A stretch of DNA of 63,590 bases, counting the filler, from Octopus bimaculoides (taxonomy: Eukaryota), in the NCBI RefSeq assembly GCF_001194135.2. It is 6 parts of 6 records of this genome, joined end to end, with 100 filler letters (N's around TTAATTAATTAA, not from the genome) between each part and the next. Parts side by side here need not be neighbours in the genome. Positions count along the whole stretch, not along the records: positions 54,916 to 60,400 come from NC_068982.1; 5 more parts are not named here. One strand, written 5' to 3'. This document shows positions 12,781 through 60,400 of this stretch, in pieces. The notes below the pieces were generated by a model, which searched no databases, was not told where the DNA came from, and was given only the letters and a program-made list of their open reading frames with translations. Position 1 is the first letter of the stretch. Each line of letters begins with the position of its first letter. The position numbers and the translations under genes are program-made.

Positions 12781-15700
12781 CATTAAGCCTGTTCTCTCTG
12801 TATATATCTCTCTCTTCTTCTTTTCCCCCACCTCTTTCCCACCACCTCTTGCCTCGTTGTCGAATCAAGACATTTTTCTGTGCGGTGTTGCGGCTGTGTC
12901 CTACAAATAAAAATGTTTCATCGGGGTTGAAGTGACTTTAAAAGTCAAAATTTTTTCTTACAAAAAAATATTTAAAAAACTAACGAACGAGATGAAAAGC
13001 AGATAAAAACTTAAATGTTTTTTGTTGTTACTTAATTTTTCCTTTTTTCAAAATTTAATTATTTTTATTACTTCTGATTTTTGTATTATTTTAAAAATAT
13101 ATTTCGCACGAGAATGTCAGCCAAAATCGGTTTGAAATTAGTTTATTTCTCTCATGATTTTCTTGAAAATCCTCGACAGAAAAACTTGGTTTTAAGTCAC
13201 AAGTATTTATTGGTCCATATTCAAAAGATTCCTTTTGCCCTTTCGACGTAATTGAAGAACCCAAACAATCCCAACTGAATATCGTATATATTTAACCAAA
13301 AATGTATAACCTAAAACAAGAAAAAGGTAATAGAAATACACTTTCACAGGTTTTATATATGAAGATACGAATTAAACTATTAGTGTTATCTTGTCAAACA
13401 TTTTGAGAGCATTTTTCGCGAAAATGATTTCAGATTTACAAAGTTTTTCTAGTCTCATTGAAAACACATATCAAATAAATAATAACCACAAGAGGAAATT
13501 AATTCCAGACTGTTAAAGCCCGTTATTGTTCAGATGAATTGATAAAAATTGGTTTATAAAATGTGGACCATCGAAACCAAGCGATCTGTCTCTTGTGCAA
13601 ATCCTTACTATCTTTCGTATTCCAGTTGCTTCTAATTTTCCCTCGCACTTAAGACCATAACTATCTCCGACAAATCCCTCGCTAATAACAGTCAAGGAAA
13701 ATGCTACTGGAACACCGAAAACACTTTAGAACTGAATAGAATGATTACGGCAAAATGCTACTGGAACAAAATCTGAATTACGGTTTTGTTGCTACGTCAT
13801 TCCCCCACCACTGAAACAAATTTCATTCTCTATTGTTTTAGCGTACGAATCCTCGTTTTGACAACGCAACAAATGTCTTTCATCCGGAAGAAATTATTCA
13901 GAGCCATTCTTACCGCTAACGATGCCGGTTATGATGCCTTTGCTATTCGCCTGTTTTAACCTGGTAACTAGCTCTGTATACTATTTTATTTATATTTTAC
14001 CCACTCTTTATTAAATGCTATCATATTTCATTACCTTCTTTACAGTTTTAAGCACCTGATGTTGACGATTGTCACTTTCAGCTGACACTTCATTAACTTG
14101 CTACTCTGGTCCCTGTAGATTTTGCGCTCTGGAATGAAGCATTCATGTTCCAGTAAAAAAGAGGTCCCTCTCTTGGGTCCTATCTAAATCGAATGTGCAA
14201 ATCACAAATATGAGTCCTGTGTAGATGACCAGTTTAGGTTGAAGGCCAGAAGTGTTAGGGAGTCGATTATATGAATCGTAATACTTAAACAGGTATTTTT
14301 ATGTTGTTTTATCAATCCCAGAATGACGAAATTCAAAGTTATCTCGAAATGATGTAAACTCTGGAACAATTAATACATGACAACTTTTTCATGGCTTTAA
14401 TAATTCTGCCAGACCTACCGTCACTCCTTGTATCACCAAAAGACTGAAAGAGAGCTCATAGGCAGTGGCAGAAAGAATGAAAGGCAAACTGGAACTCATA
14501 GTTCTGGCTCTTTCAGGGTACGAGAACAGTTCCCGGGTGTTTAAAGAGGCAGTGCTTAGGTATTTTCTTTTTCCTTCATCCTATTATAAGAAACCAGGGG
14601 AGGATGCGCAAACACTTGTCACAAACCTCTGTCAAGCATACTAGTCTCCACCAGAGAGTTCTTGTCTTGGAATCACCTCTTTGTAAACAGAGAAGAAAAC
14701 GTATTCGGTATTCGTTAGTTGACACTCGACAATTTCAGTGGTTGACAAAACAACTATGCATATCTTATAATTGCCGCCGTTTTCACATCATGTTTTGCGC
14801 TATTTTCAGTCAGAAATTCGTTGGCTTCCTTCTCGCTGCTGCTGCATCAGAATTGATATTTTCTTCAGTCTACTGTCTGTAAAACGTATTTTGTTTTCAC
14901 TCGAAAATTTTGAGGAGGCGTCTTAACACTCTGCAGTCGTTTTGTTTGTATACGAGTAGCAGAAACAAAAAAGCCTCGCAAATTGATATATTTCTTTCTT
15001 TCAACCGAACGAGGGAGAATGGATGCAAATAGTCAGATTCCTACTTCACTGTTTGTAAGTTTTGCTTTATAGAATTATTATTTCACATAGTTTCACTTGG
15101 TAATAATCCATGATGTATCATGCAGAGCTAGACAAAGCAGTTTTATCAATGTTAAAACAAGAAAGAAACAAAACAAAACAATGGCAAAAATAATTATCGC
15201 TTCTGATTTCGGTAAAAGGCCAACAATTTTCATGCTAGTGGGTGAGAACTCTATACCTGTATTTGTTTTATTGACCATGACATGATATATTTGACCTCGG
15301 CCGCATTCGAACAATGAACATACAGTTCAAGAGATAATAACATTTTTTGCCGGTTCGCCCCCTTCATTAATAGTAAGGAAATCTGACAAAATTACCAAAG
15401 TTTGTATAAAATATAAAACTAGAGAGTAGAAACTGGAAGTGACTCTATAGGAAATATAAGGTTTCCTCAAAGACAAATTCAAAATCTAATGAGAATTTTA
15501 TAATAGCACGAATAAGGATACAAGAAAGCATCAACCTGCTAGAAATGAGAGCTAAAGTCTTTTTCGCGCAAACCAAAACCAGTACCTTAACAGATATATA
15601 ACATGACCAACATGATTTTTACTAGGTACAATGAAGAGGGTCAAAGATTAAATTTCCAGAAGCCGAGACACGGGTGCGTAGATATCTTGAATAGTATAAT

Positions 15701-16049
15701 CTCTCAGAGTTGTAGTTTTGAATATGTTAATTCTTTTTTGTTTCCTCGCCTACTGTTATTTCTCTGTCATTTTGGTGCTTTACGCTGGTCTAGTTAAGAC
15801 TTTAGCGCCCATTGCTAGCAAAAATAGCACAAGAACGCAAAGTCATCCGGTCAGTTGGATGATACGAAAACGGACAACAAAACATCCAGAGAGATGATAC
15901 AAAAAAAAAATCGAGGACGGATCATTCGGAGTTTTCTTTCTTCAGTCGAGTTCCAGATTATCTTTACAATTTCGGCTGGTTATACTCAAAATTCCTCCAA
16001 TCTGGACAGCCCCAAGGAAAAACTCAGCTAAGAGCACTTAGATTCCTTG

Positions 16050-16092
<43 letters not shown>

Positions 16093-16192
16093 NNNNNNNN
16101 NNNNNNNNNNNNNNNNNNNNNNNNNNNNNNNNNNNNTTAATTAATTAANNNNNNNNNNNNNNNNNNNNNNNNNNNNNNNNNNNNNNNNNNNN
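16093..16192. other. Artificial scaffold linker (44 N + TTAATTAATTAA + 44 N)
   Basis: Exactly 100 nt with a palindromic six-frame stop cassette; the identical structure occurs five times. Confidence 0.95.
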
Positions 16193-17897
16193 GAACACAT
16201 TATCGAAAACGAAAATCGCCTAACTTAAAAAATAAAAAAAGTTACACCCATTTTCCCTCAGTGTCTAATTCCAATGTTCACTGAATTCTTTCCCCAATGT
16301 TTTTTCAACACAAAATAAAACATGTATTTTTACTTTTTCAAAGTTTTTGCATTCGACACAAGTAAAAATTTTAATGAATTTAAAAATAATAGTGAAGCCT
16401 TATTTACCACATTTATTATGAATGGGAGTGGGGTCTTTTCCAGGTTTAATTTTGAAACAACTTTCACCATTGGAATTTCCATATCTGAATTGTTCTTCAT
16501 TTGTTTAAATAAATAAATGGGTACTGTTTCCAAAATTCACTTTTCCTGATAGTGAAATAAGCCCATCAAATGGAATTCTACCTTCCATTATTTCTTTCCT
16601 ACTTGACAAAAAGTATTGTTGCTTAGTTATTCAATTCAAGATATCTATATACGATGCTTGACTCCGTGTTGCTTTTTTTCTTTTTTACGGACAGACACCA
16701 AACTGACACCTGCTTAAAATTACTGTAATAAAAAGTTTCAAAGTTTTCGATAACTGAATTTACAAGCATCCTTCGTTATTGGGGAACTATTTCATTTCTC
16801 TTACTGAGCCAAATATACATTTTAATCAGGTTTTAATTCAACACCAACGAGTGTTTCAGTGGTGGAAAAATATTCATTTCATATCAGCATCCACTGCTTA
16901 TCATTTGTATGCAGAAAACTGTATTGACAAAAAAAGGGGGTGGGATTGTAATGGTGGTTGCTGTCATGAGGGCAGAGATGGGGGTACAACGTTCCAAAAT
17001 CATGGATTTTCGTGAATTTCAATGTTTTATTTAAAAAAAAAAACTTCCCCCATTTTTGTAAGTGAAAAGTGCAAAAAAAATAGAAAATTCTGTCGTGGGG
17101 AACCCAGGGAGAAGAAGAATCATAGATTTTCTAAAAAATTTTCATAGAAGGCTTCCTCACCATCATTTTGAAGTGTGGTGAAAAAATAGATTTGAAAAAT
17201 TCCTGTGAAATGGAGAAAATCCAATCTGTGGATGAGTTATTCCGAAACTCTGCCTAAGTTTTATATATATACAATATACTTGATGTATTTAATATTATAT
17301 ATATATTTACATATATTTATATTGGTGTATGAATGTGTTTATTTGCTTTGCATATATGTGTGTTAAGTATAGTCTGTTGGTACTTGGCTACCAAGTTTCG
17401 AAATTTTAAAATTTGGTACATAAATGTAGTTTTCCAAGGTGAATAAGAGATATTTCACTTTTCCAGAAAATTTTTTTTTTTAAGTTATAGAAGTTTAAAA
17501 TTTAATAATTTTCACCCAGTCAGAAAACAGGACTTGGAAGCTGTCATTTTGTGCGTGACAATTTAACTGTTATTTTTAGGACATCTCACCACCACCTCAA
17601 TGAAAGATAATATATGATCCATATATAAGATCCATTTATTCCTTTGACCTATTAAAATGAAAGTTGAAAAGAGTCATAAAATATGATCTGCACCATCCCC
17701 AAAGTGAGCAAAGTGGCTGAACTTCAATATCACTACACACCAGTAGCACATGCAGTCCACTTACAAAAACAACACTGCTAACTGTAGAAGTAAACGTTTA
17801 ACCACTCACACTTTTAACAGAATCGACACATACACAGGAGTGCATGTACACACACATTCTCGGATCTTTCTGGTTTGACGGGCACCACTTGTTTTCT

Positions 17898-18579
17898 TAA
17901 CGAAACACTTTCAAACTTGGGATACTGGTAGAATGTGTCATATAAAACATCTTTTTCTCTTAGCTTTCTTAACAAAAATTTTTTCTTAATAAGTCATTTC
18001 ATGTTAAAGTTGTTGTATTTCTGTAATTTCAACCAATCACTGATGTCTATTCAGCTGAATACAGTTACTGCTGTTTTTGTAAACAATAATTCTTGCCGGT
18101 GTCAAGAGTGTTATTCCCTGTTTAATTATATCATTATTCCCTAGTAAGGTTTTAGGGTTAGGGTTCGGGTTTTAGGGTTAGGGTTATGGTTATGAGTTAT
18201 AGGGTTTTAGGGTTAGGGTTATGAGTGAGGTTATGGCAAAAATAATCATAACCCTAACCGTAACCCTAACTCTAAAACCCGAACCCTAACCCTAAAACCC
18301 TAAAGCTAAAACCAGTACAAATGTACGAACGATGTCATAAATAACAGTACCACGGCACTAATTTTATTCAAGGGAAAAGATCCCATGACACCATTAGAAC
18401 ATGTTGTTTACATTCCATGGCAGTAATTGTTTTCACCTCAATAGACGTCAGTGATTGGTTGAAATTACCGAAATACGACAATTTTTTACATGAAATAACT
18501 TTGAATACAAAATTTTTTATCTGTTCTATAACACAAAATATACAAGTATACGAAGTTTGAAAGTGTTTCGGTACCAAAA
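17898..18579. mobile_element. Foldback/MITE-like element with long imperfect inverted arms and central inverted telomeric repeats
   Basis: Left arm (cgaaacactttcaaactt...taatttcaaccaatcactgatgtctatt, from 17901) is the reverse complement of the right arm (aatagacgtcagtgattggttgaaatta...aagtttgaaagtgtttcg, to 18570). The centre is (TTAGGG)-like 18148-18236 then (CCCTAA)-like 18248-18313. Confidence 0.85.
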
Positions 18580-54915: not shown

Positions 54916-55170
54916 ATTTGGTAGACGGAAACTGAAAGAAGCCCGTCGTATGTATGTATATATATATGTATGTGTATGTATATGCTTGTGTGTCTGTGTT
55001 TGTTCCCCCAACATCGCTTGACAACCGATGCTGGTGTGTTTACGCAAAAGAGACCGATAGAATAAGTACTAGGCTTACAAAGAATAAGTCCTGGGGTCGA
55101 TTTGCTCGACTAAAGGCGGTGCTCCAGCATGGCCACAGTCAAATGACTGAAACAAGTAAAAGAGTAAAAG
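54916..55170 (+). mobile_element. Family B SINE, 3' portion
   Basis: atttggtagacggaaactgaaagaagcccgtcg...gaataagtcctggggtcga...ggcggtgctccagcatggcc...aaacaagtaaaagagtaaaag; closely matches the reverse complement of 58735-59040. Confidence 0.9.
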
Positions 55171-55220
<50 letters not shown>

Positions 55221-55523
55221 ATGTATGTATGTATGTATGTATGTGCATGTGTGTGAATGTATGAATATATGGAATAATCGGGTTCACGATTTCAACCGCT
55301 AGTTCAAACAGTGACGAAAGGTACCAATGTAACAATATATGGGCAACAATGTTCGTACGTGATTGTTTAATTGTATATTCATATTAACAAAATAAAATAT
55401 ATACACTATAATTGATGTATTGAATACGTTTTCCCTGATGTGTAGATACAAATATTTATCAAGCTCTTTCTCTATACGTGTGCTTATGAGTGGTGTGTTT
55501 TTATACATACACACATACATACA

Positions 55524-55569
<46 letters not shown>

Positions 55570-56401
55570 NNNNNNNNNNNNNNNNNNNNNNNNNNNNNNN
55601 NNNNNNNNNNNNNNNNNNNNNNNNNNNNNNNNNNNNNNNNNNNNNNNNNNNNNNNNNNNNNNNNNNNNNNNNNNNNNNNNNNNNNNNNNNNNNNNNNNNN
55701 NNNNNNNNNNNNNNNNNNNNNNNNNNNNNNNNNNNNNNNNNNNNNNNNNNNNNNNNNNNNNNNNNNNNNNNNNNNNNNNNNNNNNNNNNNNNNNNNNNNN
55801 NNNNNNNNNNNNNNNNNNNNNNNNNNNNNNNNNNNNNNNNNNNNNNNNNNNNNNNNNNNNNNNNNNNNNNNNNNNNNNNNNNNNNNNNNNNNNNNNNNNN
55901 NNNNNNNNNNNNNNNNNNNNNNNNNNNNNNNNNNNNNNNNNNNNNNNNNNNNNNNNNNNNNNNNNNNNNNNNNNNNNNNNNNNNNNNNNNNNNNNNNNNN
56001 NNNNNNNNNNNNNNNNNNNNNNNNNNNNNNNNNNNNNNNNNNNNNNNNNNNNNNNNNNNNNNNNNNNNNNNNNNNNNNNNNNNNNNNNNNNNNNNNNNNN
56101 NNNNNNNNNNNNNNNNNNNNNNNNNNNNNNNNNNNNNNNNNNNNNNNNNNNNNNNNNNNNNNNNNNNNNNNNNNNNNNNNNNNNNNNNNNNNNNNNNNNN
56201 NNNNNNNNNNNNNNNNNNNNNNNNNNNNNNNNNNNNNNNNNNNNNNNNNNNNNNNNNNNNNNNNATATATATATATATATATAAACAATTTGTATACCAG
56301 CATATGAATTTGCACATCTATTGCATTTGTAGGGTATGGGGTATATGGCGAAATACTCCCGAAAACAGAAATCAATCCAATATCCAAAAAATGTTGCGTA
56401 T

Positions 56402-56415
56402 TTTATTTGTTTATT
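56402..56415 (-). terminator. Two AATAAA polyadenylation signals downstream of the Ilp7-like stop codon
   Basis: Plus-strand tttatt at 56402-56407 and 56410-56415, ~90-100 nt past TGA (56502), followed on the minus strand by U/GU-rich sequence. Confidence 0.5.
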
Positions 56416-56501
56416 TAAATTCATAGCAAAAATAATGATTAATTGAGAAAATCCAAAATGTAAATTTGAAGACGGGTACTGTAGAAGATAGTACCAGTAA
56501 A

Positions 56502-56722
56502 TCAGAAAGTTGGACAGTTGCCATTCTCACCTGAGGTTTGATATCGGGAATGAGAATGACAGAATTCTGCATACTCTTCCCATGTACAACCTTTCATATA
56601 ACAACACTCTTCCATGATTCCGCCGGCTTGACCTCGTTTAACCATCGTGTGCTCCCGTTTTAGATAGCTAAATGCTTCGGAGTCCTGCAGTAAAAATGGA
56701 AACCTGAGGGAACGTCGATGAC
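56502..56722 (-). CDS. ILP7: Ilp7/relaxin-type insulin-like peptide, last visible coding exon (C-peptide end, A chain, C-terminal extension)
   Basis: Acceptor tttgctcttatcctttacAG at 56723, phase 1, compatible with the upstream exon. Encodes HRRSLRFPFLLQDSEAFSYLKREHTMVKR-GQAGGIMEECCYMKGCTWEEYAEFCHSHSRYQTSGENGNCPTF*. ECC...GCTWEEYAE[YF]C is the diagnostic A-chain motif of Drosophila Ilp7 orthologues. Confidence 0.95.
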
Positions 56723-56785
56723 CTGTAAAGGATAAGAGCAAATGCATGATTATTAGAATTATTAATATTGTTATTAATATTATTA

Positions 56786-57000
56786 AAGGCGGCGAACTGG
56801 TGGAATCATTAGCACGCCGTACAAAAAGCTTAACGGCATTTCGCCCGTCTTCACGTTCCGAATTCAAATTCCCCCTAGTTCGACTTTGCCCTCCATTCTT
56901 TCGGAGTCGATAAAATATGTACCAGTTGAGTACTGGAGGTCGATGTGATCGACTTATCTCCTCCCCTAAAATTTCTGGCCTTGTGCCAAAAATTTGAATC
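56786..57000 (+). mobile_element. Family A SINE inside the Ilp7-like intron (antisense to the gene)
   Basis: aaggcggcgaactggtggaatcattagcacgccg...ttcaaattcc...cgactttgcc...ggccttgtgccaaaaatttgaatc. Confidence 0.9.
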
Positions 57001-57891
57001 CAGTATTTAGTTGAGTCCTTTTTACATTTTACATTCGAATCCTGCAGAGATCTATTTTCCGTCGCGGTTTTTTTCTTTTTCCTACACACAAATTATCTAA
57101 AGCAAAATTTTCGAATGTGTCCTTTCTCTTTTAAGACTGTAGGATGTGATTCGAGCCAGATTTAGCTGCTAACTTTAGCAGATCGAGTGATCACAAAAAG
57201 CTCCCTTCCTTGACTTGACAGAGCTCTTAATAGATGTTGATTCCCATTGTTATTTGGAAAATTTGAGACGCCAGTAATAGTTCCAATTACAAAATCTATC
57301 TTCAGTTAATGATATCCTTTTATCCTCATATGAATCTAATATTCTACTTCTTACATTTCCGCTAAATGTTTCAGATTGTATATTTACGTGGAGATTAGTG
57401 TATTATTGGTTAATTCATAAATACGTTTTAGGTAAAAATTCTGCATGTCTAAAGATTCGATAAACTTTCAAAGAAAATATTTTGAAATCACAAATATCTT
57501 GAATCATATGAGGTGAAATGTTATTCTTTTAAGAAAAAATATATTAAGATTTCAGAAATATCAAAAGTCCAAAATTTATGATATTTCGTACCTTCAAGAT
57601 TCAAAGATCTAACTCCTTTTTTCATAGCAAAGTTATTGTAATATAAAGCTATACAATTTCAATATTAAGATATCTTGAAACTACAAATACACGAGAACAG
57701 TTAAACTTTGCATTCGTTTGATAATAAAGAAAATTTAGGAAAAATATCAAAATCGAAAATGATAATCTGTGTTGTATCATTGTTACACAATATTAATTTT
57801 AAAATATAATACTGTTATCATGCACAATATTTACTGGAATACTCTTTAAAATATATTTTGAAATGAATAAATTTATTTTAATATGACTTAC

Positions 57892-58097
57892 GTCTTAACT
57901 GGTGTTGGCTGAGAGGTCTCCTGACGTCATTAGTGTCTACTGAGATATTGGTGCTCCGGCGAAGGCGGCGTGGAGGTCGTTTGTTAATGATCTTGTAGAT
58001 GTCGTTTTGACAAGCAATGCTGATATGTGGACCTAATTCTGCTCGACATCGCCGAAAACATTCTTGGTTCCATACATTTCTCCAATGCTGGAAGTTC
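57892..58097 (-). CDS. ILP7: Ilp7/relaxin-type insulin-like peptide, B-chain and C-peptide exon
   Basis: 206-nt exon with acceptor tttcgcgtAG (58098) and donor C|GTAAGT (57891). Encodes NFQHWRNVWNQECFRRCRAELGPHISIACQNDIYKIINKRPPRRLRRSTNISVDTNDVRRPLSQHQLR, which aligns with the Drosophila Ilp7 B chain as recalled (DWENVWHQETHSRCRDKLVRQLYWACEKDIYRL). Splicing to 56722 keeps the frame (C+GT = Arg). Confidence 0.95.
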
Positions 58098-58576
58098 CTA
58101 CGCGAAATATATACACACATATATATATACAGATACATATNNNNNNNNNNNNNNNNNNNNNNNNNNNNNNNNNNNNNNNNNNNNNNNNNNNNNNNNNNNN
58201 NNNNNNNNNNNNNNNNNNNNNNNNNNNNNNNNNNNNNNNNNNNNNNNNNNNNNNNNNNNNNNNNNNNNNNNNNNNNNNNNNNNNNNNNNNNNNNNNNNNN
58301 NNNNNNNNNNNNNNNNNNNNNNNNNNNNNNNNNNNNNNNNNNNNNNNNNNCTTCAACTGAAAGGAACACAGAAAGAAATAAGGAGAGAAACATATATATA
58401 TACAACGGCAAGTTAGTAGGGTTATGTTGTTCATGGATTTGGAAATAGTGTTGTATGTGATGGGATTGTAGATAGTAGTGGTAGTCTTCTACATATATTG
58501 AGTTTCTACGAGGAATATTAATAGAGAGCATGGAAAATACGAACAAATATGAATCTGTTGTTGTTTATCTTCAAGT

Positions 58577-58607
<31 letters not shown>

Positions 58608-58734
58608 ACACATATACACACACAGACACAAACATACACTGAATGAGTAGCCCTACGATCACAGGTCTTCCAGATATGCTCATTTCGTTTTTAATATCCA
58701 AACCTCATTCCATAATATTCAACTTTGGACCATT

Positions 58735-59160
58735 ACTCTTTTACTCTTTTACTTGTTTCAATCATTTGACTGCGGCCATGCTGGAGCACCGCCTTTAGTC
58801 GACCCCAGGACTTATTCTTTGTAAGCCTAGTATTTATTCTATCGGTCTCTTTTGCCGAACCGCTAAGTTACGAGGACGTAAACACACTAGCATCGGTTGT
58901 CAAGCGATGTTGGGAGCCAAACACAGACACACAAACATACACAAACATACACAAACATACACAAACACATACATACATAAATATATATATGTACATATAT
59001 ACGACGGGTTTCTTTCAGTTTCCGTCTACCAAATCCACTCACAAGGCTTTGGTCGGCCCGAGGCCATAGTAGAAAACACTTGCCGAAGGGCCCACAAGGT
59101 GGGACTGAACCCGGAACCATGTGGTTGGTAAGCAAGCTACTTACCACACAGCCACTCCTA
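58735..59160 (-). mobile_element. Complete family B (CORE-type) SINE
   Basis: Minus-strand head gtaggagtggctgtgtggtaagtag...gggttcagtcccac, body to ...ctttgtgagtggatttggtagacgg, internal (AC)-rich tract, and 3' part ending aaacaagtaaaagagtaaaag. Confidence 0.9.
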
Positions 59161-59974
59161 CGGCATTGTTCATTGATTTATTTTTTTATTTTTATGACTA
59201 CTAATCTCGCAAATCTCATTAAAATGTTTGGAGGGGTTAAATATCAGACTTCATTATCCAAAGATTCATTCTTTAAAACGGTAGGTTTTGATTTAAGGGA
59301 GATTTGGCTAATATTTCCTGTTGGTCGAGTGACGACGTACAAGCTATGCCTTTGGCTCGCAATTATGTATCTGCTATTAGTCGTGGGGGGTAGTTATGGT
59401 TGTAGTATTGTAGATAGTACTGTTGTAGTGATTTTAGTAGTGTAGGTGGTAGCGACGGTACTTGTAGAGGTGTTGATGGGAAGGTGATAGTCGGAACATA
59501 AGAATAGTGGGTGTGGTGGGTGTTGTGGTTCTAGTGATGGAAGCAGTAGTAGTGGTGGTAGTACTCGTAGCGGTGGTGGTGGTGGCGCTGCTGCTACTGG
59601 TGCCGCTACTAGTTCTGGTAGGTTTGGAAAAAGTGTTGTTTGTGATGGGGAAAGCAGGTTATGATGTTGGTAGTGTTGGTGATGGTGTTGGTGGTAGTGG
59701 TAATGTTGGTTTTAGTGTGGTGGTTGTAGTTGTTATTGTGATGGGGGTTACTGTGTTGATGGTAGCGATGGTGGAGGTGATGGTGACGTCTGTATAATTC
59801 ATATAGGGTGATATACAATAAATATATAATGCAATAAATATATAATTGGTAAGATTTACAATGCTTATGTAATTGATATAAAGGTGTTTATTGTAAGCAA
59901 AATTAACATAGAACTCAACTATATATATAATANNNNNNNNNNNNNNNNNNNNNNNNNNNNNNNNNNNNNNTGTG

Positions 59975-60300
59975 TGTGTGTAAAAGAATACAAAATGGGA
60001 CAAGAACGCAAAACATCCAGATAGACGATACAAAGAAAACAAGGACGGGTCATTCGGAGTTTTCTTTCATCAGTCAAGTTCCAGACTATCGGAGAAAGTT
60101 ACACAAATACAAATAATAAGACATAACAACAGGTGACTTTCGACTAAGGACGAATTAAATTAACATGGCGTGTGTGGAAGTAAAGCCTTACGACAAGGAT
60201 ACAAGATTTCACAGGTACAAGGAAGAATATAGATGTTGCACGGACAACGGCCGAACCAAGAAAGAAAGGTCAGGCTTGGCCGAACACCGGTCACGTGAGG
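59975..60300. repeat. Unclassified interspersed repeat (related copy at ~15860-15965)
   Basis: aaaacatccaga.aga.gatacaaa...ggacgg.tcattcggagttttcttt..tcagtc.agttccaga is shared between the two loci. Confidence 0.7.
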
Positions 60301-60400
60301 AGAGAAGAGAGAGAGGTAGAGGCAGAGGGACAGAAGAAATAAAAAGGGACGAGAAAAAATGACAGAGACACAGTGAAGTGAAAAGAAGAGGGAAAGTGAG

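What the first reader, a model, noticed from the sequence alone, without database searches (positions are those of the whole stretch)
56502..58356. Cephalopod orthologue of Drosophila Ilp7 (arthropod relaxin) reconstructed from two spliced exons
Seen: two phase-compatible GT-AG exons give ..NFQHWRNVWNQECFRRCRAELGPHISIACQNDIYKI-(C peptide)-FPFLLQDSEAFSYLKR..KR-GQAGGIMEECCYMKGCTWEEYAEFCHSHSRY... Known: W..VW..E...RC, AC..DIY and GCTWEEYAE[YF]C define the dilp7 clade, which is distinct from molluscan insulin-related peptides (MIPs); in arthropods it has been proposed to act through a leucine-rich-repeat GPCR (Lgr4-type) as well as the insulin receptor. Inference: this is an octopus relaxin-like neurohormone, a candidate for feeding or reproductive control (e.g. 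the optic-gland axis). The gene is split by gaps and sits on a 5.5-kb piece, so it may be missed or fragmented in annotations.
Basis: partly seen in the sequence, partly recalled or inferred. Interest (0 to 1): 0.8.

Follow-up and report, generated by a model that had tools for sequence, protein, structure and literature searches.

The report
Octopus insulin-like peptide 7 gene
The two exons are real and encode the Octopus bimaculoides orthologue of fly insulin-like peptide 7, but the gene is already annotated in RefSeq and listed in a 2025 paper, so the finding is correct and not new.

Summary
On the minus strand, exon 58097-57892 (GTAAGT donor, phase 1) joins exon 56722-56502 (CAG acceptor, TGA stop). 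The product is 100% identical to residues 44-185 of XP_014782891.1, "probable insulin-like peptide 7 [Octopus bimaculoides]". The piece is a verbatim slice of chromosome 2 (CM046602.1:155056809-155062293). The 58141-58350 gap lies in intron 1, 43 nt upstream of the exon-2 acceptor, so it does not touch the coding sequence. The signal-peptide exon lies about 2.85 kb beyond the piece edge.

Orthology to Dilp7 is solid:
- The Dilp7 motifs are present.
- The gene has the diagnostic phase-2 plus phase-1 intron pair.
- NJ bootstrap for ILP7 monophyly including octopus is 196/200, separate from MIPs, IGFs and relaxins.

The gene is neither missed nor fragmented. PMC11863921 (2025) lists it as the octopus ILP7. 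No evidence links it to the optic gland. No LGR4-type receptor was found for any cephalopod.

Two side observations:
- Spiralian ILP7s, including octopus, carry an extra cysteine pair.
- The conserved C-peptide end plus A chain of ILP7 and MIP-type precursors resembles the propeptide plus Gla module of vitamin-K-dependent carboxylase substrates (hhalign 90%, clean controls).

The parts
57892..58097 (-). Coding exon 2 of LOC106878236 (206 nt). It carries the last base of codon 44, residues 45-112 and the first base of codon 113. It encodes the end of the spacer, the ILP7-type B chain (NFQHWRNVWNQECFRRCRAELGPHISIACQNDIYKIIN), the KR83-84 cleavage site and the N-terminal C peptide.
   Evidence: Acceptor cgtAG|G, donor GAC|GTAAGT. 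100% match to P0001.
57983..58096 (-). B-chain region (N45-N82). It includes the Dilp7 signature W-x2-V-W, the extra Cys57, and the canonical Cys61 and Cys73.
   Evidence: Alignments. Invariant ILP7 columns W53, C61, C73 and D76.
56723..57891 (-). Intron 2 (1169 nt), phase 1, GT...AG, inside the C-peptide coding region.
   Evidence: Same position and phase as in Dilp7-type genes described in PMC11863921.
56502..56722 (-). Coding exon 3, covering residues 113-185 plus the TGA stop. It encodes the C-terminal C peptide, the KR141-142 cleavage site and the A chain with its C-terminal tail.
56655..56702 (-). Conserved C-peptide end, FPFLLQDSEAFSYLKR (residues 120-135). It is predicted helical and resembles a vitamin-K-dependent carboxylase recognition propeptide.
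56505..56633 (-). A chain, G143-F185: GQAGGIMEECCYMKGCTWEEYAEFC followed by the tail HSHSRYQTSGENGNCPTF, which carries the extra Cys182.
56368..56501 (-). Probable 3' UTR. An AATAAA signal (minus strand) lies near 56410. The end coordinate is taken from the RefSeq gene start 155058261 given in PMC11863921 Dataset S3.
   Evidence: coordinate mapping. Inferred; not tested with transcripts.
58098..60400 (-). 3' part of intron 1 (phase 2; about 5.1 kb in the assembly). It contains the gaps 58141-58350 and 59933-59970, microsatellites and an interspersed repeat. Exon 1 lies outside the piece.
54916..55171 (.). Interspersed repeat copy with microsatellite tails. It is inverted relative to the copy at 58737-59034. 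It flanks the gene's 3' end and is not part of the gene.
   Evidence: arms 87-98% complementary.
58737..59034 (.). Second, inverted copy of the same interspersed repeat, inside intron 1.

Best explanation
These are coding exons 2 and 3 of the single-copy Octopus bimaculoides gene LOC106878236 on chromosome 2. It encodes a 185-aa Dilp7-type (ILP7) insulin-superfamily prepropeptide.

Shown:
- Exon 1, outside the piece, encodes the signal peptide and most of a short spacer.
- Exon 2 encodes the last residues of the spacer and a B chain with the ILP7-specific N-terminal W..VW helix.

Inferred from the family:
- The precursor enters the secretory pathway.
- It folds with the three canonical insulin disulfides plus a fourth, spiralian-specific one (Cys57-Cys182).
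- It is cut at KR83-84 and KR141-142 by prohormone convertases.
- It is released as a two-chain neurohormone.

The receptor is open. In flies Dilp7 has been linked to both the insulin receptor and LGR4. No LGR4-type receptor is detectable for cephalopods, so I think the insulin-receptor tyrosine kinase or an unidentified receptor is the more likely route in octopus.
For: - Exact splice junctions and frame.
- 100% identity to XP_014782891.1 and to the chromosome assembly.
- HMMER search of 1.84 billion representatives: 71 relatives. All nine other clusters looked up by name (eight of the nine best hits plus P0012) are ILP7-type: seven hold members named 'insulin-like peptide 7' (Centruroides, Haliotis, Pomacea, Biomphalaria, Physella, Priapulus, Tubulanus), one is the Owenia protein listed as Ofus_ILP7 in PMC11863921, and one (Bradybaena) is unnamed.
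- 30 of 32 family members hit Pfam Insulin PF00049.
- NJ tree on B+A cores: ILP7 clade including octopus 196/200; octopus inside an 8-Cys spiralian-only clade 135/200; MIPs, IGFs, relaxins and Dilp1-6 all outside.
- Intron phases 2 and 1 at the positions that PMC11863921 gives as diagnostic for Dilp7-type genes.
- N-terminal hydrophobic core at residues 9-25.
- AlphaFold model with mean pLDDT 79.8, above 90 over the B and A helices.
- The same sequence is published as octopus ILP7.
Against: - The octopus protein alone falls below Pfam's Insulin gathering score (16.7-17.4 bits against 23).
- The Foldseek search of the model against PDB gave only an insignificant IGF-II match.
- I saw no transcript evidence. 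The exact protein was found only on the genome contig, not on any transcriptome-derived assembly.
- No receptor or function has been tested in any cephalopod.
- No second cephalopod ILP7 protein is present in the collection.
Confidence: 0.95

Rival explanations
1. It is a molluscan insulin-related peptide (MIP) or an IGF-like gene, not an Ilp7 orthologue.
For: It shares the general insulin Cys framework and the C-peptide motif A..[FY]L.KR with MIPs. It has eight cysteines, as MIPs do.
Against: The extra cysteines sit at different places. In this protein they are at B(-4) and in the A-chain C-terminal tail, not in the MIP-type CECC pattern. The A chain has the ILP7 spacing CC-x4-C and the WEEYAE motif. 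Bootstrap support for the ILP7 clade is 196/200, with the MIPs in a separate clade. The gene has the extra phase-2 intron.
Confidence: 0.02
2. It is an orthologue of vertebrate relaxin / Dilp8 / starfish RGP and acts through an RXFP/LGR3-type receptor.
For: PMC11863921 finds the Dilp7-type and relaxin/Dilp8-type families to be sister groups.
Against: - Relaxin/Dilp8-type genes lack the phase-2 intron and the spacer between signal peptide and B chain. This gene has both.
- There is no RxxxRxxI motif in the B chain.
- Octopus has a separate relaxin-like gene, XP_014770853.1.
- No LGR3-type receptor is listed for octopus.
Confidence: 0.02
3. It is an intact-looking but unexpressed or decaying gene: a relic ligand retained after loss of its LGR4 receptor.
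For: No cephalopod LGR4 was found. No other cephalopod ILP7 protein was found. There was no transcriptome-derived contig carrying the exact protein. The octopus branch is rather long, and the C-peptide motif carries a one-residue insertion.
Against: - The ORF is complete, with consensus splice sites.
- All 14 columns invariant across the ILP7 alignment are kept in octopus, including both spiralian-specific extra Cys.
- The RefSeq model extends to a distant 5' UTR exon, which suggests transcript support.
Confidence: 0.05

Closest known systems
Drosophila melanogaster Dilp7 (NP_570070.1), called 'arthropod relaxin' by Veenstra
   Same: B-chain N-terminal W..VW.QE...RC, AC..DIY, A chain ECC-x4-C-TWEEYAE[YF]C, a spacer after the signal peptide, and phase-2 plus phase-1 introns.
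   Different: Octopus has two extra cysteines (Cys57, Cys182) and a longer A-chain tail. The fly has an LGR4, which is indirectly implicated as the receptor. None was found for cephalopods.
Spiralian ILP7s: Crassostrea virginica XP_022286880.1, Haliotis, Pomacea and Biomphalaria 'probable insulin-like peptide 7', Owenia CAH1799283.1, Tubulanus XP_074662659.1
   Same: Same eight-cysteine pattern (xDCHRRC ... C in the A-chain tail), GIMEECCY.K.C, CH.H.R tail and gene structure. The octopus protein is sister to this group in the tree.
   Different: Only 24-37% overall identity. Octopus has ECFRRC where the others have DCHRRC, N54 where the nearly invariant H stands, and a one-residue insertion in the C-peptide motif.
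Molluscan insulin-related peptides (MIPs; the Mytilus and Sepioteuthis examples in PMC11863921 Dataset S4)
   Same: Insulin fold framework, two-chain processing, and the C-peptide end motif A..[FY]L.KR.
   Different: MIPs have CC-x3-C with CECC, no W..VW extension and no WEEYAE. They form a separate clade.
Propeptide plus Gla module of vitamin-K-dependent carboxylase substrates (human TMG2, factor X and factor IX, as in PDB 9bvp, 9bvl and 9bvk)
   Same: F[LI]-x4-A-x2-[FI]L, followed about 20 residues later by EC-x4-C-S-[WYF]-EE-A-x-E. hhalign gives 90% probability over 56 columns, and shuffles do not reproduce it.
   Different: No ILP7 member hits Pfam Gla PF00594. The aligned cysteines are not structurally equivalent: the ILP7 Cys that aligns to Gla Cys17 is the one that pairs with the B chain in insulins. 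No Gla residue has been shown in any ILP7.

Membership tests
Dilp7-type insulin-like peptide (ILP7) | B chain with the N-terminal extension W-x2-x-W-[HN]-x-[ED]-x3-[RK]-C and the A-C-x-x-D-[IP]-Y end | tested here: met
   QHWRNVWNQECFRRC...IACQNDIY aligned with 60 ILP7s. W53, C61, C73 and D76 are invariant columns.
Dilp7-type insulin-like peptide (ILP7) | A chain E-C-C-x4(5)-C-[STVA]-W-E-E-[YFLV]-[AG]-E-x-C, with one residue more between CC and C than in insulin | tested here: met
   EECCYMKGCTWEEYAEFC. E151, C152, C153, C158, W160, E161, E162, E165 and C167 are invariant.
Dilp7-type insulin-like peptide (ILP7) | [quoted passage not shown] | tested here: met
   Exon 1 is 131 nt...GGAAG|gtaata, joined to cgtag|G at window 58097. 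Criterion.
Dilp7-type insulin-like peptide (ILP7) | Phase-1 intron inside the C-peptide coding region | tested here: met
   57892|56722, codon C|GT.
Dilp7-type insulin-like peptide (ILP7) | Groups with Dilp7 orthologues and not with MIP, IGF or relaxin in a phylogeny | tested here: met
   NJ on 60 columns and 67 sequences: 196/200 bootstraps. This is a distance method on short cores only. PMC11863921 used the sequence in its ML tree and labels it ILP7 in Dataset S3.
Dilp7-type insulin-like peptide (ILP7) | Co-occurrence with an LGR4-type receptor in the same genome (the argument used for ligand-receptor pairing) | tested here: not met
   No LGR4 or LGR3 is listed for O. bimaculoides or Sepioteuthis in Dataset S5. 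There is no cephalopod among 76 hits to oyster LGR4. The test covers annotated proteins only, not the genomes, so real absence is unproven. This is a correlate, not a defining sequence feature.
Insulin/IGF/relaxin superfamily (Pfam PF00049) | Six-cysteine framework C-x11-C ... CC-x3-5-C-x8-C and a match to the family HMM | tested here: met
   The framework is present. The octopus protein scores 16.7-17.4 bits, below the 23-bit cut-off, but 30 of 32 aligned orthologues match, best 2e-6. Fold search was inconclusive.
Molluscan insulin-related peptide (MIP) | CC-x3-C A chain with an additional Cys two residues before CC (C-E-C-C), paired with a Cys at the far N-terminus of the B chain | tested here: not met
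   The octopus A chain reads IMEECC, with no Cys at -2. The extra Cys are at B(-4) and in the A tail.
Relaxin / Dilp8 / RGP type | B chain immediately after the signal peptide, a single phase-1 intron, and the RxxxRxxI receptor-binding motif (vertebrate relaxins) | tested here: not met
   A spacer and a phase-2 intron are present. The B chain CRAELGPHISIAC lacks the second Arg (direct reading).
Vitamin-K-dependent carboxylase substrate (Gla protein) | Propeptide recognition site with Phe -16, Ala -10 and Leu -6, followed by a Glu-rich stretch | tested here: inconclusive
   ILP7 consensus PFLxxxxAxxFL fits the spacing. The strict motif is present in 26 of 61 precursors and the loose one in 47 of 61. 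The octopus copy fits only loosely. HMMER, hhalign and shuffle tests are positive. There is no Pfam Gla hit.
Vitamin-K-dependent carboxylase substrate (Gla protein) | Gamma-carboxyglutamate actually present in the mature peptide | not testable with these tools
   Needs mass spectrometry (+44 Da per Gla) or an in vitro carboxylation assay.

The most novel reading that the evidence does not exclude
The conserved end of the C peptide in ILP7 precursors, and in MIP-type invertebrate insulin precursors, may be a recognition site for the vitamin-K-dependent gamma-glutamyl carboxylase. In octopus this segment is FPFLLQDSEAFSYLKR. The invariant glutamates of the A chain (EECC...WEEYAE) would then be converted to gamma-carboxyglutamate.

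ILP7 would be an endogenous Gla hormone. It would also be a candidate for the missing natural substrate of the invertebrate carboxylase, which in Drosophila is active and recognises human factor IX and prothrombin propeptides although no Gla protein is known there.

A weaker variant of the same reading is that the propeptide plus Gla module and the insulin C-peptide plus A-chain exon share ancestry.
Probability: 0.15. Interest if true: 0.75.

Novelty: already known. Interest (0 to 1): 0.18.

Why it matters
As stated, the finding adds nothing to the record. The gene model, its name and its family assignment have been public since 2015, and it was used in a 2025 comparative study. Its value is as a correct positive control for the first-stage reader, who got exon boundaries, splice phase and family right from raw sequence.

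Two things around it could matter.

First, octopus keeps a well-conserved ILP7 while no LGR4-type receptor can be found for any cephalopod. If that absence is real, it is an exception to the ligand-receptor co-distribution argument on which the Dilp7-LGR4 pairing largely rests. It would also point to the insulin receptor or another receptor.

Second, the resemblance between the ILP7/MIP C-peptide plus A chain and carboxylase substrates suggests a testable post-translational modification. It bears on the open question of what the invertebrate vitamin-K-dependent carboxylase is for.

Tried and rejected
- Reading the open frame from exon 2 up into the gap as coding (MYLYIYMCVYISR...). Rejected: it is TA/TG microsatellite upstream of a consensus acceptor, and the annotated model splices to a distant exon 1.
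- Looking for the signal-peptide exon inside 58351-60400. tblastn finds nothing there; it is at L001 10001-10131.
- Fold search of the AlphaFold model against PDB. Only an insignificant IGF-II match (E=6), so uninformative.
- Pfam on the octopus protein alone. Insulin falls below the gathering score, so I relied on the family-wide result.
- Pfam Gla domain in ILP7s. No hit in 32 members.
- Other genes in the piece. All other ORFs of at least 70 aa are gap-spanning or low-complexity. The Rfam hits mir-466 and SCARNA7 are far below gathering scores and sit on CA repeats.
- Searching for other cephalopod ILP7s by single sequence and by profile. None found. The word-index search is insensitive: one search scored only 7 candidates and missed Haliotis. 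The result therefore excludes close annotated orthologues only.
- Literature. No paper links dilp7 with octopus function, or dilp7 with carboxyglutamate.
Full report
**What is in the sequence**

The piece 54916-60400 carries 943 N in three gaps and is rich in microsatellites. On the minus strand, one frame reads ...RRNFQHWRNVWNQECFRRCRAELGPHISIACQNDIYKIINKRPPRRLRRSTNISVDTNDVRRPLSQHQLRR and runs into a consensus donor (GAC|GTAAGT) after base 57892. A second frame starts behind a pyrimidine-rich acceptor (TTATCCTTTACAG|GT) at 56722. It reads HRRSLRFPFLLQDSEAFSYLKREHTMVKRGQAGGIMEECCYMKGCTWEEYAEFCHSHSRYQTSGENGNCPTF and ends at TGA 56504-56502. The junction is phase 1 (C+GT = Arg).

**The gap**

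The piece is 100% identical, N runs included, to positions 12978-18462 of locus L001. That locus is CM046602.1 (chromosome 2 of assembly GCA_001194135.2, Octopus bimaculoides), and the piece corresponds to 155056809-155062293. The annotated 185-aa protein P0001 has 44 further N-terminal residues. They are encoded by an exon at L001 10001-10131, about 2.85 kb beyond the piece's end. That exon ends ...GGAAG|gtaata (131 nt, phase 2) and joins the G at window 58097, just behind a cgtAG acceptor. The gap 58141-58350 therefore lies in intron 1, 43 nt upstream of that acceptor. The open frame between the acceptor and the gap is intronic TA/TG repeat. Nothing coding depends on continuity across the gap. 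The '5.5-kb piece' results from how the scan window was assembled, not from a small scaffold.

**Identity**

The spliced product is 100% identical to XP_014782891.1 / XP_052821902.1, 'probable insulin-like peptide 7 [Octopus bimaculoides]'. An exhaustive HMMER search of 1.84 billion representative proteins gave 71 relatives. I looked up names for eight of the nine best of these plus P0012. Seven of those nine clusters hold members named 'insulin-like peptide 7', from scorpions, abalone, apple snail, Biomphalaria, Physella, a priapulid and a nemertean. The Owenia protein is the one listed as Ofus_ILP7 in PMC11863921, and the Bradybaena protein carries no name. Thirty of 32 aligned members match Pfam Insulin; the octopus protein alone is sub-threshold.

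Reference sequences came from the supplements of PMC11863921. An alignment of the B and A cores shows every ILP7 signature in the octopus protein: W..VW, RC, AC..DIY, and ECC-x4-C-TWEEYAE-x-C. A neighbour-joining tree recovers an ILP7 clade that includes octopus in 196 of 200 bootstraps. Octopus is sister to the other spiralian ILP7s. MIPs, IGFs, relaxins, Dilp1-6 and bombyxin all fall outside.

[quoted passage not shown] The octopus gene has exactly this structure.

**Already known**

Datasets S3 and S4 of PMC11863921 (BMC Biol 2025) list LOC106878236, NC_068982.1:155058261-155125485(-), XP_014782891.1, labelled 'ILP7', with the identical sequence. The gene is thus neither missed nor fragmented. 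ILP7 in molluscs generally is also established.

**How it most likely works**

Shown by the sequence:
- an N-terminal hydrophobic core (residues 9-25);
- a spacer;
- a B chain;
- dibasic sites at 83-84, 134-135 and 141-142;
- an A chain of 43 residues.

The AlphaFold model (mean pLDDT 79.8) has confident helices at 46-52, 62-74 (B chain), 126-137 (C-peptide end), and 148-155 and 160-164 (A chain).

Inferred from the family: secretion, convertase processing, and a two-chain hormone with the three insulin disulfides.

All nine named spiralian ILP7s, including octopus, have an extra Cys four residues before the first B-chain Cys and another in the A-chain tail. The oyster sequence has them too. 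None of six named ecdysozoan ILP7s has either, and neither do fly, hemichordate or starfish ILP7. A fourth disulfide is the obvious reading, but it is untested.

**Receptor and function**

PMC11863921 and PMC12702675 report only indirect evidence that fly Dilp7 uses LGR4, and note suggested binding to the insulin receptor as well. In Dataset S5 of PMC11863921, O. bimaculoides has only a bursicon-receptor-type LGR and Sepioteuthis only one GRL101. My search with oyster LGR4 returned 76 proteins at E<=1e-40, from bivalves, gastropods, a nemertean, many arthropods, a hemichordate and echinoids, but none from a cephalopod.

Caveats:
- Only annotated proteins were searched.
- Only the 8000 candidates sharing the most words with the query were scored.
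- The paper used an older octopus proteome of 15,842 proteins.

I therefore treat 'acts through Lgr4' as unsupported for octopus, and the insulin receptor or an unknown receptor as the more likely route. The optic-gland study of O. bimaculoides reports ImpL2, an insulin-binding protein, rising at the feeding-to-fasting transition. It does not report an insulin-like peptide, and it says the pathway's actions in octopus are unknown. No other cephalopod ILP7 protein is in the collection.

**An unexpected resemblance**

A profile of 32 ILP7s searched against all PDB sequences gave, as best hit, the propeptide plus Gla fragment of transmembrane Gla protein 2 (E=0.005). Factor X and factor IX fragments were also in the top five, ahead of IGF-II. 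These are the substrates co-crystallised with the vitamin-K-dependent carboxylase.

The match has two parts, in the right order and spacing:
- The conserved C-peptide end (consensus PFLxxxxAxxFL) lines up with the propeptide (F -16, A -10, L -6).
- The A chain (ECC..GCSWEEYAEYC) lines up with ERECxEExCS[WYF]EEAxE.

Results of the tests I ran:
- The strict motif occurs in 26 of 61 ILP7 precursors and a loose form in 47 of 61, ending 12-25 residues (in all but two cases) before the CC. The octopus copy has a one-residue insertion.
- Shuffles of the three Gla fragments reached the real HMM score in 0, 0 and 1 of 20,000 trials. Each half alone beats at least 99.8% of its shuffles.
- hhalign gives 90% probability (P=1.7e-6) over 56 columns.
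- A reversed Gla profile gives 0.1%, and 200 column-shuffled profiles reach a maximum score of 19.1 against 36.4.
- The spiralian and non-spiralian ILP7 subsets each reproduce the hit (92% and 87%).
- MIP-type invertebrate precursors give 65%.
- Vertebrate insulin/IGF/relaxins give 0.1% and insect Dilp1-5 with bombyxin give 1.8%.
- The Mytilus proteins that the 2025 authors' Dilp7 HMM picked up as by-catch have Gla as their only Pfam hit or, for one, their best of two weak hits (sub-threshold for both). They score 17-21 bits on the ILP7 HMM.

Against the idea:
- No ILP7 hits Pfam Gla.
- The aligned cysteines are not structurally equivalent.
- Nothing shows Gla in an ILP7.

For plausibility:
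- Cone-snail venom insulin is documented to contain carboxyglutamate.
- The Drosophila carboxylase is active and recognises human factor IX and prothrombin propeptides. [quoted passage not shown]
- I found no paper linking dilp7 or insulin C peptides to carboxylase recognition.

I rate the functional reading at about 15%.

**Rest of the piece**

Two inverted copies of an interspersed repeat (54916-55171 and 58737-59034), CA/TG/TATG microsatellites, and a G/T-rich low-complexity stretch (about 59400-59790). There are no further credible ORFs or RNA genes.

**Verdict**

The functional inferences are untested, and the Lgr4 part is not supported for cephalopods.

Noticed in passing
window 56655-56702 and 56505-56633 (minus strand); alignments A1 and A2: The conserved C-peptide end plus A chain of ILP7 precursors resembles the propeptide plus Gla module of vitamin-K-dependent carboxylase substrates (TMG2, factor X, factor IX). 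So do those of MIP-type invertebrate insulin precursors. PDB profile search E=0.005; hhalign 90% (P=1.7e-6); shuffled, reversed, vertebrate-insulin and insect-Dilp1-5 controls negative. No literature link found.
   Followed up: partly
window 58060-58062 (Cys57 codon) and 56514-56516 (Cys182 codon), minus strand: Octopus ILP7 shares with all named spiralian ILP7s (gastropods, oyster, annelid, nemertean) an extra cysteine at B(-4) and another in the A-chain C-terminal tail. Both are absent from all named ecdysozoan and ambulacrarian ILP7s. This implies a lineage-specific fourth disulfide.
   Followed up: partly
not in the window (receptor side): No LGR4- or LGR3-type receptor protein could be found for any cephalopod, either in PMC11863921 Dataset S5 or in a search with oyster LGR4, although octopus keeps a conserved ILP7. 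This is either an annotation gap or a real exception to the Dilp7/LGR4 co-distribution.
   Followed up: partly
not in the window: O. bimaculoides ILP7 is the only cephalopod ILP7 protein in the 5.8-billion-cluster collection, and its 90% cluster has one member. The 2025 paper's Sepioteuthis proteome also yielded no ILP7.
   Followed up: partly
window 54916-55171 and 58737-59034: Two inverted copies (87-98% complementary arms) of an interspersed repeat with microsatellite tails bracket exons 2-3. Further partial copies lie elsewhere in L001.
   Followed up: partly
window 59400-59790 (+ strand): A G/T-rich low-complexity stretch (GGTGGTAGT-like units) inside intron 1 gives long spurious ORFs rich in V/G on the plus strand and in T/P on the minus strand. 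No homology was sought.
   Followed up: no
L001 10001-10131 and upstream: Exon 1's ATG is preceded by an acceptor (ttgcag|ggaaaATG). The RefSeq gene extends about 60 kb further upstream, so there is at least one distant 5' UTR exon. L001 is about one third N.
   Followed up: no
PMC11863921 Dataset S4: Several Mytilus edulis entries in that paper's relaxin/insulin dataset are not insulin-like peptides. They look like propeptide plus Gla-like modules (KKKEALDFLHHRVKRGLGEECREGCSWEEIAEIYEPN...) picked up by the Dilp7 HMM. One of them carries an automatic 'CRISP1' label.
   Followed up: partly
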